Below are positions 49,921 to 63,164 of a DNA stretch of 64,000 nucleotides, piece after piece. Each line of letters begins with the position of its first letter. Position 1 is the stretch's first letter. The notes beneath the pieces were generated by a model, which made no database searches, had not been told where the DNA came from, and saw only the letters and a list, made by a program, of their open reading frames with translations. The stretch lies in IMG/VR virus record IMGVR_UViG_3300040801_001224, positions 62,001 through 126,000 of that record; one strand, 5' to 3'. The position numbers and the translations under genes were made by a program.

Positions 49921-50055
49921 ATGTTGTATAAGAGTGATTATGTTTCTGAAGAAGAACGTAAAGATATTGAAAAAGCGTACAGTAGCAAAAAACAGAAACG
50001 TAAGTTACAAAATACAATACCTGTAAAAGGAAATGACAGAAGAAGTCAGAATTAA
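49921..50055 (+). CDS. 44-aa basic upstream ORF overlapping the GGDEF-EAL start (not in ORF track)
   Basis: AAGGAGG (49907-49913), 7 nt, ATG; MLYKSDYVSEEERKDIEKAYSSKKQKRKLQNTIPVKGNDRRSQN*. Confidence 0.55.
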   Translation: MLYKSDYVSEEERKDIEKAYSSKKQKRKLQNTIPVKGNDRRSQN

Positions 50056-52009
50056 TTTTTATAAGATTGCTCTTGTATACTGGGTAGTGTTTGCTCTATT
50101 TGAGCTTCTGATGCACAGCATTTATATGAGTGGAGCAGGCGCTTATAGCAAAGTTGCCATCGTCGAAGCGATTTTATTTATATCTGGCATTGTGCTAACA
50201 ATACTTGCCAAAAATTCTCTCAAAGACGAAAGCAAAAAGATATATGATGAGCAGTATGAGAGAAAGATCAGGGATCTAGCATCACGTTCACCAACAATGG
50301 GAAGTGACGAATATTTCTCAGTCCTAACAAAAAACATTATTGATGCTGTTGGCTGTGATTATGTTGTTATTGGACAAATAAATTATACTGATAATACTAG
50401 TAAACCATACATAACAACTAAGTCAGCTCGTGGTAGAAATAGAGAGTATCTCCAAACTGAAGTATTATTAAAGACGAGCAACTGTCAAGTAACTGTTCAG
50501 GACATTGAAGATGCTGACCTATCTAGAATATTTAAGGGCAAAAAAGGCAGACACATAAACATGCCACTAGTGTCTAGTGATAACGATATCCATGGTATCC
50601 TGTCTTGTATTTGGATCGGCCCTGATCATCCGCCCAAAACTGCCAAAAACGTACTCAAAATATTTTCGACACAGTGTCAGTCAGAACTTGAGCGATTACT
50701 TACTGAAGAAAAACTTAAATATCAGGCAACTCACGATGAGTTAACTGGCCTACCAAATCGAAACTTTGTAATGGAAAAGTTAAAAGGTATAGTTACTAAA
50801 TACAATTCGGGTGTCATAACTAATAAAACATATAACGTTTATTTTATTGACCTGGATGATTTTAAAGAAGTTAATGACGAATTTGGGCATGACGCTGGCG
50901 ACCAGTTATTAGTGGAGATATCAAGAAGATTGGAGTCATGTGTGAGGGAAGAAGACACGGTGGCAAGACTAGGAGGCGATGAGTTTGTTATTGTTGAAGC
51001 AGGATCAACGAATGTTTCTTCAATTTCGCTATCAGATAGAATTATCAATAAATTACAGCAAGCCGTAAATCTTCATGACAACGTTTCTGTTACCGTGACT
51101 GCTTCAGTCGGGCATTTATGTATTCCTGAAGATTCACAAGATGTGACTGAAATATTCAAGTATGCTGACTTTGCCATGTATTACGCTAAATCACTGGGTA
51201 AGAATGTTGGTGTTAAATTTACTCAAGAACTATTCCGTGATTGTCAGCAAGAAAAAGTTATTGAAGGAAAGCTCATTAGTGCCATTGAGAATAAAGAAAT
51301 TGACATGGCCATCCAGCCAATTGTTGATCATAATCAAAAGATAGTGAAAGGTGAGGTACTGGCAAGATGGTTCTCAGATGACATTAGTCTAACAATTGAA
51401 GATGTGATTAACATTGCTGAGAGACGTGGCCTTATCGTTGCGTTCAGTAAACACATATTTGAAAAGTCAGCTGAATACTGCTCAGAACTTAAATTCGAAC
51501 ATGGCATTTATGCTAGACTCGCTGTTAACTGCTCGCCACTACTGTTTAAGGATCCAGAGTTTGTGCCATATATTTCCAGTGTGTTTGATAAGTATAACAT
51601 AAGTCCTAAACAAATTACTCTTGAAATTACAGAGTCAGTAGCAAGTAAGCACAAGGAAATATTGCCTACTATTGTCGACTTAAAGAGTAGGGGATTTGAA
51701 CTGGCACTTGACGATTTCGGCAAGGGATATTCATCATTGAGTTTTCTAGAAACCTTGCCAATTGATGTAGTGAAACTTGATAGGGCATTGGTTACAGACG
51801 CAATTGGCAACAAGAAGAAGTCTACATTATTGAAAGCCGTAGCTGAGATTTGTAAGGTGTATGAATACAAGTTGGTTGCCGAGGGAATTGAAACTAAAAA
51901 AGACTTTGAGTTTTTGAAAAAATTGGGGTATGACTGGCTACAAGGATATTACTTTTCTAGACCGGTACCATCAGAAGAATACACAAAGTTATTGACACAG
52001 GAGAAATAA
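50033..52009 (+). CDS. Membrane-anchored GAF-GGDEF-EAL diguanylate cyclase / phosphodiesterase
   Basis: Two N-terminal hydrophobic helices; HDELTGLPNR, FIDLDDFKEVNDEFGHDAGD, REED I-site, RLGGDEF; EVLARW, VNCS, LEITES, DDFGKGYSS, VKLDR, AEGIE, LQGYYFSRP. Confidence 0.95.
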   Translation: MTEEVRINFYKIALVYWVVFALFELLMHSIYMSGAGAYSKVAIVEAILFISGIVLTILAKNSLKDESKKIYDEQYERKIRDLASRSPTMGSDEYFSVLTKNIIDAVGCDYVVIGQINYTDNTSKPYITTKSARGRNREYLQTEVLLKTSNCQVTVQDIEDADLSRIFKGKKGRHINMPLVSSDNDIHGILSCIWIGPDHPPKTAKNVLKIFSTQCQSELERLLTEEKLKYQATHDELTGLPNRNFVMEKLKGIVTKYNSGVITNKTYNVYFIDLDDFKEVNDEFGHDAGDQLLVEISRRLESCVREEDTVARLGGDEFVIVEAGSTNVSSISLSDRIINKLQQAVNLHDNVSVTVTASVGHLCIPEDSQDVTEIFKYADFAMYYAKSLGKNVGVKFTQELFRDCQQEKVIEGKLISAIENKEIDMAIQPIVDHNQKIVKGEVLARWFSDDISLTIEDVINIAERRGLIVAFSKHIFEKSAEYCSELKFEHGIYARLAVNCSPLLFKDPEFVPYISSVFDKYNISPKQITLEITESVASKHKEILPTIVDLKSRGFELALDDFGKGYSSLSFLETLPIDVVKLDRALVTDAIGNKKKSTLLKAVAEICKVYEYKLVAEGIETKKDFEFLKKLGYDWLQGYYFSRPVPSEEYTKLLTQEK

Positions 52010-61732: not shown

Positions 61733-61905
61733 CACCTGATATAGAATATAATGGCGAAGGACTCTATGTTAATGATGGTAAGGGTAACAAACATAATCTA
61801 GTTGAATTGCTTGAAGACGTAATGTTAATTAAGGAGTTTTTGGAAGAGTCTTCACTCACTGAAGAGTTTAACGAATATAAATCGTTTTGGAAATTAAAGA
61901 AATGA
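61729..61905 (+). CDS. Small protein, SSL-EE family member 2 (not in ORF track)
   Basis: ATGA overlap; MTPDIEYNGEG...EFLEESSLTEEFNEYKSFWKLKK*. Confidence 0.6.
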   Translation: MTPDIEYNGEGLYVNDGKGNKHNLVELLEDVMLIKEFLEESSLTEEFNEYKSFWKLKK

Positions 61906-62078
61906 GTGCAATTGAGCAACCTAAACAATTTGTAAAGATGCAGGATGTTGTCCAGACACTAATCGATTCTGTCAATGAGTTGAACGGTGAACTGGAGGAC
62001 ATGAGAGAATTTATAGAAGAAAGTAGCCTTTCGGAAGAATACCGAAAGCATAAGATGGTAAATACCTTAAAGAAATAA
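61902..62078 (+). CDS. Small protein, SSL-EE family member 3
   Basis: ATGA overlap at 61902; EFIEESSLSEEYRKHK. Confidence 0.6.
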   Translation: MSAIEQPKQFVKMQDVVQTLIDSVNELNGELEDMREFIEESSLSEEYRKHKMVNTLKK

Positions 62079-62453
62079 GGCGTTCGGATAAGGGCTGGTA
62101 TCCCGGAGAACTCACTGGCTGAAGAAGCTATAGACCTCCTTAAGTGCCATTGCGTAAAGCATAAATCAGTTCGCCGTTTTAATTCGATGAAGTAATTTAA
62201 TGATACTGTGGACGCCAGTTCGAATCTGGCCATCTCCACCAAATCTATGGGGATGAATTAGGTTTCGACAGGGTATACTGAGAATTATGGAGAATCAGTC
62301 AATGCTAAAGGCTGTGAGGATTGGGAGTAACACCTTTAATGGTGCTCGGTCGAAGAAGCAAAAAAATAATTGAAAATGATGAAATTTTCGCATTAGCGGC
62401 ATAGACCGTTAACGGGGTTTTACACCGTCTTCCTTGTTATCAAAAGACGGTGT
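62079..62453 (+). ncRNA. ssrA: Circularly permuted (two-piece) tmRNA; outer boundaries approximate
   Basis: T-arm GCCAG-TTCGAAT-CTGGC plus CATCTCC-A-CCA ends at 62241; 7-nt spacer; GGGGATG starts at 62249 (G3.U pair); tag ORF ENDEIFALAA* at 62372-62404. Confidence 0.9.
62422..62453. terminator. Hairpin at the tmRNA 3' end, overlapping the convergent gene stop
   Basis: ACACCGTCTT (62422-62431) / AAGACGGTGT (62444-62453). Confidence 0.6.
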
Positions 62454-63096
62454 CTTTATGTATGCTATAGTGTTGGCGTAACCCGTTCACTGACTTTTCT
62501 TCTCCGCAAATAATACAAGAACATTTTATTCTGCTACTATTATTTTTAGAAATTTTTTCTCTGGTAGTTTTGGATAATTTTCTTCCCTTCCCTTGCCCAG
62601 TGCGATCTATGTTTCTTATCTTCGGGTCATGCATTGGGTTGTTGTTTTTTAATCGTTCCGAAGCTTGCCGGCGTTGTTCGTTAGTCCATTCGTACCCTCC
62701 ACCACCTGGTCTAGATACTCCTTTATTTGACTCAGATATTTTTCTTTTGTGTTCTTCAGAAAAAGATCGTCCAGTATTGGCCTGACTTATTGTTTTTTTG
62801 TGTTCGTCAGATATTACCCTCGGTCCACCATCTGTTCCGTTTTCTATAGCAAGATTTGCCCATTCTTTTGATTCTACGATTTGGTTTAGCTTTGAAAAAA
62901 GTGTAGAAAATCTTTTTAGCTTTTCTAAGCTTTTGAATTCCTTATACCACAAGGTATCGATAAATTTGCCGTGTTTCTTGATGTGACGTAACCAGTATTT
63001 GCCCGATCCGGCATATTTAGTCGGCTCATTTTTTGTCTTGCCGAAATATTTGAGCCCGGTTTTCTGGTGCTGTTTTATATATAGATAAATACTCAT
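62440..63096 (-). CDS. GIY-YIG (Seg-like) homing endonuclease with NUMOD3-like repeats
   Basis: IYLYIKQHQKTGLKYFGKT, YAGSG, WANL..ENG..GG, SDEHKKTIS / SEEHKRKIS; likely start MSIYLY at 63096 after AGGAG. Confidence 0.8.
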   Translation of the reverse strand: MSIYLYIKQHQKTGLKYFGKTKNEPTKYAGSGKYWLRHIKKHGKFIDTLWYKEFKSLEKLKRFSTLFSKLNQIVESKEWANLAIENGTDGGPRVISDEHKKTISQANTGRSFSEEHKRKISESNKGVSRPGGGGYEWTNEQRRQASERLKNNNPMHDPKIRNIDRTGQGKGRKLSKTTREKISKNNSSRIKCSCIICGEEKSVNGLRQHYSIHKDTVF

Positions 63097-63100
63097 GCTG

Positions 63101-63164
63101 ATACTCCTATTCAGTATTAGAGTAGTCGGATACGCCAATATCGCGGACTACATTTTTATTTATC
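63101..63164 (-). promoter_or_regulatory. Late promoter plus structured leader of the homing endonuclease
   Basis: GATAAATA (- strand, 63157-63164); GTAGTC/GACTAC stem with inner GATA/TATC; competing TACTC/GAGTA stem over the RBS. Confidence 0.5.

What the first reader, a model, noticed from the sequence alone, without database searches (positions are those of the whole stretch)
62079..62453. Phage-encoded circularly permuted (two-piece) tmRNA with a gammaproteobacterial-style tag
Seen: the 3' tRNA-like half (GGAC, T-arm, CATCTCC-A-CCA ending at 62241) precedes the 5' half (GGGGATG...GGTTTCGAC from 62249), separated by only 7 nt. The acceptor stem pairs fully with the G3.U alanine determinant. 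The tag frame AAAAAAATAATT|GAA AAT GAT GAA ATT TTC GCA TTA GCG GCA TAG gives (A)ENDEIFALAA. Known: two-piece tmRNAs occur in Alphaproteobacteria and some cyanobacterial and betaproteobacterial lineages; E. coli's one-piece tag is ANDENYALAA, and the LAA end targets ClpXP. Inference: either an independent permutation event in a phage lineage or capture from a two-piece host. The resume codon is GAA instead of the usual GCA, and splitting could protect against host anti-tmRNA/tRNA nucleases.
Basis: partly seen in the sequence, partly recalled or inferred. Interest (0 to 1): 0.75.

Follow-up and report, generated by a model that had tools for sequence, protein, structure and literature searches.

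The report
Two-piece tmRNA gene in jumbo phage
A 328-kb phage from a microbial mat carries a real, circularly permuted (two-piece) tmRNA gene of the betaproteobacterial type, but such genes are already known in phages and are common in viral metagenomes, so this is a divergent new member and not a new kind.

Summary
ARAGORN calls a permuted tmRNA at 62149-62495 with the tag ENDEIFALAA. Rfam's tmRNA_permuted model scores 95.6 bits against a cut-off of 47, E 3e-17.

The window lies in a complete 328,096-bp, 40% G+C phage genome with terminal repeats, 26 tRNAs, no SmpB gene and no integrase.

The gene was not permuted independently. The betaproteobacterial two-piece model (RF01850) aligns over its full length and beats the other clan models, although its 66.3 bits fall below the cut-off of 84. 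The gene keeps that lineage's stop-codon helix and its post-tag hairpin with the conserved loop CCUUGUUAUCAA.

Its nearest relatives are phage and metagenome tmRNAs that share a pseudoknot-1 motif. They are at most 72% identical, and no close relative was found.

Permuted tmRNAs are already catalogued in phages. About 100 turned up in IMG/VR with one pattern. Beta-type examples also sit in the cultured phages Stenotrophomonas phage Marzo and Acinetobacter phage BUCT628.

Two features stand out. The 7-nt linker is short but not unique. The GAA resume codon was the only one among 107.

The most likely function is extra ribosome rescue during infection, using host SmpB. No RNA evidence exists. 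I rate it a new member of a known kind, of modest interest.

The parts
62079..62180 (+). Non-coding leader between the upstream ORF stop (TAA 62076-62078) and the first modelled helix. It may hold the transcription start or the 5' tail of the acceptor piece. Its function is unassigned.
   Evidence: Sequence read. The consensus scan found no sigma-70-like promoter on the + strand. No other Rfam family matched. ARAGORN starts the gene at 62149 and RF01850 at 62140.
62181..62241 (+). Acceptor piece (the 3' tRNA-like half). It holds the P2 strands (62181-62209), GGAC (62210-62213), the T-arm (62214-62230), the 3' acceptor strand CATCTCC (62231-62237), the discriminator A (62238) and an encoded CCA (62239-62241).
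   Evidence: RF04321 alignment with structure line, ARAGORN 3' tRNA domain and coordinates checked.
62242..62248 (+). A 7-nt intervening segment AATCTAT. It would be removed by RNase P cleavage before G62249 and by 3' trimming back to CCA. This removal is inferred.
   Evidence: Intervening lengths in 107 permuted tmRNAs from viral contigs range from 4 to 39 nt, and 19 of them are 12 nt or less.
62249..62300 (+). Start of the coding piece. It holds the 5' acceptor strand GGGGATG (G3.U with T62235), the D-loop analogue AATTAGGTTTCGAC, and the P2 strands that pair with 62181-62209.
   Evidence: RF04321 and RF01850 alignments, ARAGORN 5' tRNA domain and the co-fold of the two pieces.
62301..62360 (+). 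Pseudoknot-1 region with the sub-clade motif AATGCTAAAG...CGGTCGAAGAAGCAAA. A hairpin GATTGGG (62319-62325) / CTCGGTC (62345-62351) has its loop (62326-62344) enlarged in this gene by a small extra hairpin, CACC/GGTG.
   Evidence: Alignment with L014, L238-L245. The motif was found in only 4 IMG/VR and 9 metagenome contigs. Relatives show pair-preserving one-sided changes in the hairpin. Rfam's own PK1 stem is not matched.
62361..62371 (+). A-rich resume context AAAAAATAATT. It has U at -5 and A at -4 relative to the resume codon, as in E. coli SsrA.
   Evidence: ARAGORN resume consensus and the alignment to the beta consensus ccaUAAAuGCc. The E. coli comparison rests on my own knowledge.
62372..62404 (+). 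Tag reading frame GAA AAT GAT GAA ATT TTC GCA TTA GCG GCA TAG. The predicted tag is (A)ENDEIFALAA, with GAA (Glu) as the resume codon.
   Evidence: It is homologous to the GCc AAc GAU GAg ... position in RF01850. It is four codons shorter than in the nearest sub-clade.
62391..62412 (+). Helix 5 analogue. TTAGCGG (62391-62397) pairs with CCGTTAA (62406-62412), enclosing the stop codon in the loop.
   Evidence: Read from the sequence. Equivalent pairings with different sequences occur in relatives, for example GCAG/CUGC, GCUG/CAGC and UUUGCCG/CGGUAAA. These were judged by eye and not formally tested.
62422..62453 (+). Terminal hairpin of 10 bp, ACACCGTCTT / AAGACGGTGT, with the conserved beta-type loop CCTTGTTATCAA. 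GGGG at 62414-62417 may pair with CCTT to form a pseudoknot. The hairpin may also serve as the transcript's end.
   Evidence: RF01850 alignment. In the sequences scored before the script stopped (25 of 38), the stem is present with quite different sequences and the loop is conserved. The pseudoknot stem is not statistically supported. The terminator scan found no match.
62440..63138 (-). Neighbouring Seg-like homing endonuclease gene (GIY-YIG-like N-terminus, NUMOD3). It is not part of the tmRNA. Its stop codon lies at 62440-62442, in the loop next to the 3' strand of the terminal hairpin, and its last four codons overlap that strand.
   Evidence: Pfam NUMOD3 at 27.3 bits and phrog_314 homing endonuclease at E 3e-9. 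Translation.

Best explanation
This is a phage-borne ssrA gene of the betaproteobacterial-type two-piece (circularly permuted) lineage.

It is transcribed as one precursor. That precursor is either read through from the upstream + strand gene array or started from an unidentified phage promoter.

Host RNase P cuts before G62249. Exonucleases then trim the 7-nt trailer back to the encoded CCA. This yields an acceptor piece of about 60-95 nt and a coding piece of about 205 nt. The two pieces are held together by the 7-bp acceptor stem and the A/U-rich P2 helices.

Host AlaRS charges the RNA through G3.U and the discriminator A. Host SmpB and EF-Tu then deliver it to ribosomes stalled on broken or stop-less mRNAs, which are plentiful during infection. 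Translation resumes at GAA and adds (A)ENDEIFALAA. The ...LAA end marks the product for ClpXP-type proteolysis and the ribosome is freed.

The benefit to the phage would be extra ribosome-rescue capacity, alongside its 26 tRNAs.

Shown: the gene, its fold class, its lineage and its intact tag frame. Inferred: transcription, processing, charging, dependence on host SmpB, and the benefit to the phage.
For: - ARAGORN calls a permuted tmRNA.
- RF04321 scores 95.6 bits against a cut-off of 47, over the full model.
- RF01850 aligns over positions 1-331 at E 1e-19 and is the best of the clan models. Its 66.3 bits exceed the cross-hits of standard tmRNAs in 151 Burkholderiales genomes, which reach at most 50 bits.
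- The acceptor stem has 7 bp with G3.U, a discriminator A, an encoded CCA and a T-loop UUCGAAU.
- The resume context has U-5/A-4, and the frame is in-frame and ends ALAA-stop.
- The stop-codon helix is kept, as is the post-tag hairpin with its conserved loop. The stem of that hairpin differs in sequence between clades while staying paired.
- Related beta-type permuted tmRNAs sit in many viral contigs, some next to tRNA arrays and some on contigs of 146-234 kb. They also occur in cultured phages.
- The gene's G+C equals the phage's 40%.
- A strain in an unrelated sediment metagenome keeps the tRNA-like and PK1 parts at about 97% identity.
- The phage has no SmpB gene, so host SmpB would be needed.
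- No integrase was found, so the gene is not an attachment-site remnant.
- From my own knowledge: host tmRNA is needed for growth of lambda-immP22 hybrids and of Mu.
Against: - There is no RNA evidence. None of the three metatranscriptome runs listed for the source sample holds it, and nothing was laid from the one that was laid.
- RF01850 is below its gathering score, at 66.3 against 84.
- The P2 helices are short and A/U-rich with two non-canonical pairs. Rfam's PK1 stem is not matched.
- The GAA resume codon is unique among 107 permuted tmRNAs from viral contigs.
- A close relative has a different, longer tag with a GCA resume codon. The tag region has therefore changed recently, which could also mean relaxed constraint.
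- No consensus promoter or terminator was found.
- The host is unknown.
Confidence: 0.68

Rival explanations
1. The RNA is a decoy or modulator. It binds host SmpB and/or ribosomes but tags poorly, so it dampens or redirects host trans-translation instead of adding to it.
For: - The phage encodes no SmpB, so it must compete for the host's.
- The resume codon is atypical.
- Position 2 of the tag is Glu instead of Ala. In E. coli that position contributes to SspB binding (my own knowledge).
- A TLD-only tmRNA exists in mycobacteriophage DS6A, and a similar molecule inhibits tmRNA in E. coli (PMC4131195, PMC11915505).
Against: A pure decoy would not need an intact in-frame tag ending ALAA-stop, a conserved resume context, the stop-codon helix or the post-tag hairpin.
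Confidence: 0.1
2. The gene is a passenger drifting towards loss. It was inherited from an ancestral phage but is no longer under selection in this genome.
For: - It sits on a long branch, at most 72% identical to anything found.
- Its scores are the lowest among the beta-type phage genes examined: 66 bits against 93-185.
- The tag region differs sharply from that of a 97%-identical relative.
- P2 is weak.
- No expression data exist.
Against: - All tRNA-identity elements are perfect.
- The 12-nt length difference in the tag is in frame.
- The 7-bp stop-codon helix and the 10-bp terminal hairpin are intact. Random decay would be unlikely to preserve all of these.
Confidence: 0.14
3. The permutation arose independently within a phage lineage from a one-piece gammaproteobacterial tmRNA.
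For: - The tag resembles E. coli ANDENYALAA.
- Cultured phages with similar genes infect hosts (Stenotrophomonas, Acinetobacter) that have one-piece tmRNAs, to my knowledge.
Against: - The gene aligns end to end with the beta two-piece model.
- It shares that lineage's architecture after the tag, with no PK3 or PK4, and the conserved loop CCUYGUNACNNAA.
- It groups inside the beta-type set in trees.
Confidence: 0.04
4. The gene was captured recently from a two-piece betaproteobacterial host chromosome such as Rhodocyclaceae.
For: - It shares the lineage.
- The AU test does not reject placing it with the bacterial clade (p 0.32).
Against: - The gene has 40% G+C, against 53-62% in bacterial two-piece genes.
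- Its PK1 motif is shared only with viral and metagenome contigs of 37-43% G+C.
- The best tree puts it with those contigs, with support 97/78.
- No bacterial genome carries its tag.
Confidence: 0.04

Closest known systems
Betaproteobacterial two-piece tmRNA (Rfam RF01850 beta_tmRNA; the 'third lineage' of Sharkady and Williams 2004, as cited in PMC9004378)
   Same: - The gene order is the same: acceptor piece, linker, coding piece.
- The tRNA-like domain matches.
- The tag pattern xNDExFAxAA matches.
- The stop codon sits in a helix.
- A single post-tag hairpin carries the loop CCUUGUNACNNAA.
- There is no PK3 or PK4.
- The model aligns over its full length.
   Different: - It scores 66.3 bits, below the cut-off of 84.
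- It has 40% G+C, against 53-62%.
- The linker is 7 nt, against about 25-33 nt.
- The outer P2 segment and the final G+C-rich terminator hairpin are missing.
- The PK1 region is enlarged.
- The resume codon is GAA, not GCC or GCA.
- It lies in a phage, not a chromosome.
Phage and metagenome tmRNAs with the PK1 motif AATGCTAAAG...CGGTCGAAGAAGCAAA (IMG/VR L014, L078, L098, L106; metagenome contigs L238-L246)
   Same: - These are the closest sequences found, at 72% identity over 135 nt.
- They share the PK1 motif and hairpin and have low G+C.
- They group with the window's gene in the tree, with support 97/78.
   Different: - Their tags have 14 residues (ANDDVYTEEYALAA and the like) with a GCA resume codon.
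- Most of their linkers are longer.
- They lack the extra small hairpin at 62328-62344.
- Their surrounding genes are unrelated to this phage.
Permuted tmRNAs of cultured phages: Stenotrophomonas phage Marzo (MZ326868), Acinetobacter phage BUCT628 (MZ593728), Stenotrophomonas phage BUCTxx99 (OR529408)
   Same: - These are phage-encoded permuted tmRNAs.
- Marzo and BUCT628 pass RF01850 at 94.6 and 94.3 bits. BUCTxx99 passes RF04321 at 100 bits.
- Their tags begin ANDD or ANDN and end in AA.
   Different: - Only the tRNA-like domain is alignable by BLAST.
- Their tags are different and longer.
- In Marzo the gene sits in a tRNA cluster, whereas here it lies about 137 kb from the tRNA array.
Two-piece tmRNA of OM43 phage Melnitz and of pelagiphages and cyanophages (Buchholz et al. 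2022, PMC9004378)
   Same: - These are phage-encoded two-piece ssrA genes.
- A role in maintaining translation during infection has been proposed for them.
- 53 of 133 unique phage tmRNAs were called two-piece.
   Different: - Melnitz's gene is of the alphaproteobacterial type and carries a glutamine riboswitch.
- No riboswitch or other Rfam family was found here.
E. coli SsrA (one-piece tmRNA, Rfam RF00023)
   Same: - The tRNA-like domain has G3.U.
- The resume context has U-5/A-4.
- The tag is of the form xNDExxALAA, ending in the ClpX-recognised LAA.
   Different: E. coli SsrA is one piece with four pseudoknots, a GCA resume codon, and Tyr where this tag has Phe.

Membership tests
Permuted (two-piece) tmRNA, Rfam RF04321 | Score at or above the curated gathering score over the tRNA-like domain, P2 and the tag region | tested here: met
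   95.6 bits against 47, model positions 1-213 of 213, E 2.8e-17. The same result was obtained on the whole genome.
Permuted (two-piece) tmRNA, Rfam RF04321 | Circular permutation, with the 3' acceptor/T-arm half upstream of the 5' acceptor half in one gene | tested here: met
   CCA ends at 62241 and G1 is at 62249. ARAGORN reports 'Permuted', with the 3' domain at [55,93] before the 5' domain at [101,128].
tmRNA in general | Alanine identity: 7-bp acceptor stem with G3.U70, discriminator A and a CCA end | tested here: met
   GGGGATG pairs with CATCTCC, with G62251.T62235. A is at 62238 and CCA at 62239-62241.
tmRNA in general | Short tag reading frame with a resume context and a hydrophobic C-terminus followed by a stop | tested here: met
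   The context AAUAAUU precedes GAA, and the frame reads ENDEIFALAA-UAG. The resume codon is atypical, seen once in 107.
tmRNA in general | Pseudoknot 1 upstream of the tag | tested here: inconclusive
   Rfam's PK1 stem is not matched, with all pairs flagged. A sub-clade-specific hairpin with pair-preserving changes occupies the position, but a pseudoknot was not demonstrated.
tmRNA in general | Processing by RNase P, charging by AlaRS, SmpB binding and tagging of stalled products | not testable with these tools
   No RNA run was listed that holds the sequence. Biochemical tests are required.
tmRNA in general | An SmpB partner is available | tested here: not met
   PF01668 was not found in the complete 328-kb phage genome at E up to 1. 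The partner would have to come from the host, as in other tmRNA-bearing phages.
Betaproteobacterial two-piece tmRNA, Rfam RF01850 | Score at or above the gathering score of 84 bits | tested here: not met
   66.3 bits, full-length alignment, E 9.6e-20, and the best of the clan models. Bacterial members scored 169-313 bits, and standard tmRNAs in the same order scored at most 50.
Betaproteobacterial two-piece tmRNA, Rfam RF01850 | Lineage-specific 3' architecture: stop codon in a helix, then one hairpin with the loop CCUYGUNACNNAA, and no PK3 or PK4 | tested here: met
   The helix pairs 62391-62397 with 62406-62412. The hairpin at 62422-62453 has the loop CCTTGTTATCAA.
Betaproteobacterial two-piece tmRNA, Rfam RF01850 | Placement within the beta-type clade in a tree with alpha- and cyano-type outgroups | tested here: met
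   The gene falls inside the beta-type group in both trees, nearest the PK1-motif sub-clade with support 97/78. It is on a long branch, and its relation to the bacterial sub-clade is not resolved (AU p 0.32).

The most novel reading that the evidence does not exclude
The 'betaproteobacterial' two-piece tmRNA may be mainly a phage-borne RNA family. It would move among phages whose hosts mostly have one-piece tmRNAs and work with whatever SmpB the host supplies.

On this reading, the chromosomal two-piece ssrA of Rhodocyclaceae-like bacteria could descend from such a phage gene. The sporadic 'beta-type' calls in MAGs of many phyla could have the same source. This would reverse the usual assumption that phages take the gene from bacteria.

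The window's gene would then be a deep, AT-adapted phage branch. Its tag module is being reshaped (GAA resume codon, four-codon deletion), possibly helped by the adjoining homing endonuclease.

The evidence is compatible with this reading but does not show it:
- The bacterial clade is one branch among many phage branches.
- Only 4 of 151 sampled genomes of the order carry the form.
- Beta-type genes occur in Stenotrophomonas and Acinetobacter phages.
- Beta-type counts are scattered across phyla (supplement read).
Probability: 0.12. Interest if true: 0.65.

Novelty: new member of a known kind. Interest (0 to 1): 0.3.

Why it matters
The finding adds a complete jumbo-phage example to the phages that carry their own ribosome-rescue RNA, and it is a divergent one.

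It also shows that the beta-type two-piece form is widespread in uncultured phages. The form is present, partly unannotated, in cultured phages of Stenotrophomonas and Acinetobacter.

For tmRNA biology, the natural GAA resume codon is a ready-made variant for testing frame setting. The tag (A)ENDEIFALAA, with Glu at position 2 and Phe at position 7, is a ready-made variant for testing SspB/ClpX recognition. The 7-nt linker marks a near-minimal substrate for making two pieces from one transcript.

None of this changes current understanding.

Tried and rejected
- **Close relatives in isolate phages.** BLAST of the locus and of 12 kb around it against 50,697 phage records found no match. At E up to 10, only short hits to the tRNA-like domain appeared.
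- **Close relatives of the phage.** A scan of IMG/VR with the RIIA protein found none. RIIA is at most 33% identical to any isolate phage.
- **Exact tag in bacteria.** xNDEIFALAA has no match in 185,579 species genomes.
- **Exact sequence in metagenomes.** A 26-mer from the gene has no match in JGI metagenomes.
- **Relatives of the genome.** The genome search does not offer 'relatives' for a virus record.
- **A phage promoter upstream.** CCATTGCGTAA recurs 16 times in the genome, against 1-6 in shuffles. However, the copies lie in unrelated, coding-like contexts with no shared flanks, so I rejected it as a promoter. The sigma-70 and terminator scans found nothing on the + strand.
- **Post-tag pseudoknot GGGG/CCUU.** 89% of cells pair, but this is no better than shuffles, so the result is inconclusive.
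- **MFE folding of the precursor.** The z-score is -1.4, which is not informative. The co-fold of the two pieces recovers the acceptor stem and the T-arm, but not a reliable P2.
- **Mosaic origin of the tag module.** I asked whether it came from the ANDE[VK]FALAA group (L003, L045). Separate trees of the 5' and 3' parts both place the PK1-motif sub-clade nearest, so this is not supported.
- **AU test.** It cannot reject grouping the gene with the bacterial clade (p 0.32).
- **Attachment-site remnant.** There is no integrase in the genome, and both halves of the gene are complete.
- **Expression.** None of the listed RNA runs holds the sequence. Nothing was laid from X4, the one metatranscriptome run laid. 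This is not evidence of silence.
Full report
**1. What is there**

- The acceptor/T-arm half comes first: GGAC at 62210-62213, a T-arm GCCAG-UUCGAAU-CUGGC at 62214-62230, the strand CATCTCC at 62231-62237, the discriminator A and CCA ending at 62241.
- Seven bases later, GGGGATG begins at 62249. It pairs with CATCTCC over seven positions, including G3.U.
- GGTTTCGAC follows.
- After an A-rich stretch comes the frame GAA AAT GAT GAA ATT TTC GCA TTA GCG GCA TAG at 62372-62404.

ARAGORN reports a permuted tmRNA at 62149-62495 with tag ENDEIFALAA. It is the only tRNA-like gene in the window. Rfam's tmRNA_permuted model (RF04321) matches 62181-62404 over its whole length at 95.6 bits, against a gathering score of 47, with E 2.8e-17.

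**2. The genome around it**

The window is bases 62001-126000 of a single 328,096-bp IMG/VR virus record. The record has direct terminal repeats, is rated 100% complete and has 40% G+C. It came from a microbial-mat metagenome.

The window encodes RIIA, long tail-fibre proteins and a GGDEF-EAL protein. A Seg-like homing endonuclease lies directly after the tmRNA on the other strand. Elsewhere the genome has 26 tRNA genes. It has no SmpB gene and no tyrosine integrase.

It is far from every sequenced phage. There are no nucleotide matches, and RIIA is at most 33% identical to any isolate phage. This is therefore a jumbo phage of unknown host, probably lytic, and the tmRNA is its own gene and not a host flank.

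**3. Which tmRNA lineage**

I reran the region with permissive thresholds. The betaproteobacterial two-piece model RF01850 then aligns over all 331 positions (62140-62458) at E 9.6e-20. It is the best of the tRNA/tmRNA clan models, with six lower-scoring overlapping matches suppressed. Its 66.3 bits are below the gathering score of 84.

For scale, bacterial two-piece genes score 169-313 bits. Ordinary one-piece tmRNAs in 151 evenly drawn genomes of the same order cross-hit at 50 bits or less. Only 4 of those 151 genomes carry the two-piece form.

The alignment shows lineage-specific features beyond the universal tRNA-like domain.
- The tag pattern GC-AAC-GAU-GA----UUCGC--U-GC-GC-UA is present.
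- A hairpin after the tag carries the loop CCUUGUUAUCAA, which matches the model's CCUUGuuACcaAA.
- In an alignment of 38 beta-type sequences, the loop is conserved. In the 25 sequences scored before the script stopped, the enclosing stem keeps pairing with quite different sequences. Examples are ACACCGTCTT/AAGACGGTGT here, GATAGTTGA/TCAACTATC, GGTAGGTT/AACCTACC and AGCGC/GCGCT.
- A 7-bp helix (62391-62397 with 62406-62412) encloses the stop codon. Relatives have the equivalent helix with compensating third-codon positions. I judged this by eye.
- A possible pseudoknot stem, GGGG with CCUU, pairs in 89% of cells. That is no better than shuffled controls, so I leave it open.

The gene therefore belongs to the beta-type two-piece lineage by architecture. 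It fails that family's curated score. An independent permutation event is unlikely.

**4. Relatives, and whether this is new**

Published work already counts two-piece tmRNAs in phages. Buchholz et al. found 402 of 18,146 phage genomes with ssrA, giving 133 unique forms, of which ARAGORN called 53 two-piece (PMC9004378). The 2025 tmRNA database lists 79 phage sequences (PMC11915505).

One pattern for a T-arm, CCA, a short linker and GGGG found 105 IMG/VR stretches. ARAGORN calls a permuted tmRNA in nearly all of them. Most have 35-42% G+C, and some lie on contigs of 146-234 kb or next to tRNA arrays. Of the 32 I classified with Rfam, 24 pass RF01850 and four pass the alpha model.

Weak BLAST hits led to cultured phages.
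- Stenotrophomonas phage Marzo has an annotated tmRNA that is permuted and passes RF01850 at 94.6 bits.
- Acinetobacter phage BUCT628 passes RF01850 at 94.3 bits but is unannotated.
- Stenotrophomonas phage BUCTxx99 passes RF04321 at 100 bits and is also unannotated.
- Rhizobium phage RHph_I1_18 has an alpha-type gene.

To my knowledge, Stenotrophomonas and Acinetobacter have one-piece tmRNAs. The beta-type form therefore travels in phages irrespective of the host's own gene form.

The kind is known. This gene is a new, divergent member.

**5. Nearest relatives**

No close relative was found.

The best matches are 72% identical over 135 nt. They are four IMG/VR contigs (L014, L078, L098, L106) and nine metagenome contigs (L238-L246). 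All share an otherwise rare motif in the pseudoknot-1 region, AATGCTAAAG...CGGTCGAAGAAGCAAA. Their surrounding genes are unrelated to this phage.

A maximum-likelihood tree puts the window's gene with this sub-clade, with support 97/78. The bacterial two-piece genes form another branch, with support 93/99. The window's branch is long, and an AU test cannot reject joining it to the bacterial clade (p 0.32).

Two points argue against recent capture from a Rhodocyclaceae-type chromosome. The gene has 40% G+C, equal to the phage's and well below the 53-62% of bacterial two-piece genes. The PK1 motif is also shared only with viral and metagenome contigs.

**6. What is unusual in this copy**

1. *Linker.* It is 7 nt. 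Among 107 permuted tmRNAs from the viral loci, the range is 4-39 nt and 19 have 12 nt or fewer. It is short but not unique.
2. *Resume codon.* It is GAA. The others are GCN (102), GGC (2) and GAC (2), so GAA is unique in this set. It sits at the position homologous to GCc in the model, preceded by UAAUU with U-5/A-4. ARAGORN's frame therefore looks right, and the tag would be (A)ENDEIFALAA.
3. *Tag length.* The tag is four codons shorter than in the nearest sub-clade, and the PK1 hairpin loop carries an extra small hairpin.
4. *A close relative with a different tag.* A 252-nt contig from an unrelated sediment metagenome matches 62149-62368 with six differences. It then diverges into ...UAUCA GCA AAC GAU GAU ACA UUU GAA UAU G, which reads ANDDTFEY... 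with a GCA resume codon. The tag module has therefore changed recently while the tRNA-like and PK1 parts stayed nearly constant. I tested whether the module came from the ANDE[VK]FALAA group, but separate trees of the two parts do not support that.
5. *Overlap with the endonuclease gene.* The homing-endonuclease ORF on the other strand has its stop codon in the loop of the terminal hairpin, next to the stem's 3' strand, and its last codons overlap that strand. This invites the idea of co-conversion, but nothing tests it.

**7. The tag's affinity**

The 120 stretches it returned are almost all Betaproteobacteria, with a few Alteromonadales and Thiomicrospira. ARAGORN standard and about 14 genuine two-piece genes among them.

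'Betaproteobacterial style' is therefore more accurate than 'gammaproteobacterial style'. This is at best a weak hint about the host, because Marzo and BUCT628 show that phages of gammaproteobacteria carry such genes.

**8. How it most likely works**

*Shown:* an intact tRNA-like domain with alanine identity elements, the P2 strands, a tag frame with a proper resume context and an ...ALAA-stop end, and the lineage's 3' helices.

*Inferred from established tmRNA biology:*
- The gene is transcribed as one precursor.
- RNase P cleaves before G62249, and exonucleases trim the 7-nt trailer to CCA.
- The two pieces stay together through the acceptor stem and P2.
- Host AlaRS charges the RNA, and host SmpB and EF-Tu deliver it to stalled ribosomes.
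- Translation resumes at GAA, the product is tagged, and ClpXP-type proteases degrade it.

The likely gain is more ribosome-rescue capacity during infection. This fits the phage's large tRNA set and the known dependence of some phages on host tmRNA (my own knowledge).

*Caveats:*
- There is no RNA evidence. None of the listed RNA runs holds the sequence, and nothing was laid from the one metatranscriptome run that was laid.
- No promoter or terminator was recognised.
- P2 is A/U-rich with two mismatches.

The rival explanations are an SmpB-titrating decoy, a passenger drifting towards loss, an independent permutation and a recent capture from a host. They are weighed in their own section.

**9. 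Verdict**

This is a real feature and it was correctly recognised. It is a divergent member of the beta-type two-piece tmRNAs that are already known in phages and are common in viral metagenomes. I rate it a new member of a known kind, of modest interest.

The most novel reading still open is that this 'betaproteobacterial' form is primarily a phage-borne family and that bacteria acquired it from phages. I give that about 0.12.

Noticed in passing
window 62440-63138 (-): A Seg-like homing endonuclease gene lies directly after the tmRNA on the other strand. It has a GIY-YIG-like N-terminus and a NUMOD3 motif, and its likely ATG is at 63096. Its TGA stop (62442-62440) lies in the loop of the tmRNA's terminal hairpin, and its last four codons overlap the stem's 3' strand. 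Two weak paralogues exist elsewhere in the genome.
   Followed up: partly
window 63096-63131: A 35-nt cassette lies just upstream of the endonuclease ATG. On the minus strand it reads CCGACTACTCTAATACTGAATAGGAGTATCAGC-ATG, which looks like a promoter plus a ribosome-binding site. It occurs four times in the 328-kb genome at 91-94% identity. It also sits on several other contigs of the same metagenome with different flanks.
   Followed up: partly
window 62149-62368 compared with a contig of run X3 (sediment metagenome): A relative from an unrelated study is about 97% identical over the tRNA-like and PK1 parts. It then diverges abruptly into a different tag (ANDDTFEY...) with a GCA resume codon. 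The tag module has therefore changed recently between close strains.
   Followed up: partly
window 50033-52009 (+): The phage encodes a 658-aa protein with GGDEF (135 bits) and EAL (191 bits) domains, which make and break cyclic-di-GMP. It matches phrog_11823, a family of unknown function.
   Followed up: no
G000:C1:261544-290925 (outside the window): The genome carries an array of 26 tRNA genes. One, at 266270-266347, has an 8-nt anticodon loop (ARAGORN 'tRNA-???', tttg). Rhizobium phage RHph_I1_18 has a similar odd call (tatg) next to its tmRNA.
   Followed up: no
L237 (MZ593728.1 39424-39757) and L234 (OR529408.1 98583-98908): Acinetobacter phage BUCT628 and Stenotrophomonas phage BUCTxx99 carry permuted tmRNA genes that their GenBank records do not annotate. 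Their tags are ANDNVFGAKTLAA and ANDDVYVVALAA.
   Followed up: yes
L003:772-1086 (IMGVR_UViG_3300013132_002598): A low-G+C viral contig has a beta-type permuted tmRNA (RF01850 at 119 bits, tag ANDEVFALAA). Its acceptor strand is followed by ACTA and not ACCA, and its D-loop analogue is altered. ARAGORN misses it.
   Followed up: partly
window 61800-62078 (+): Two adjacent small ORFs just upstream of the tmRNA end in similar peptides (...EEFNEYKSFWKLKK and ...EEYRKHKMVNTLKK). This suggests a tandem duplication of a small gene.
   Followed up: no
Supplementary Table 2 of PMC11915505: Beta-type permuted tmRNA calls are scattered through genomes of many phyla: Bacteroidota 23, Bacillota 7, Acidobacteriota 5, Patescibacteria 5, and several archaeal MAGs. 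This would fit phage or prophage DNA binned with those genomes.
   Followed up: no
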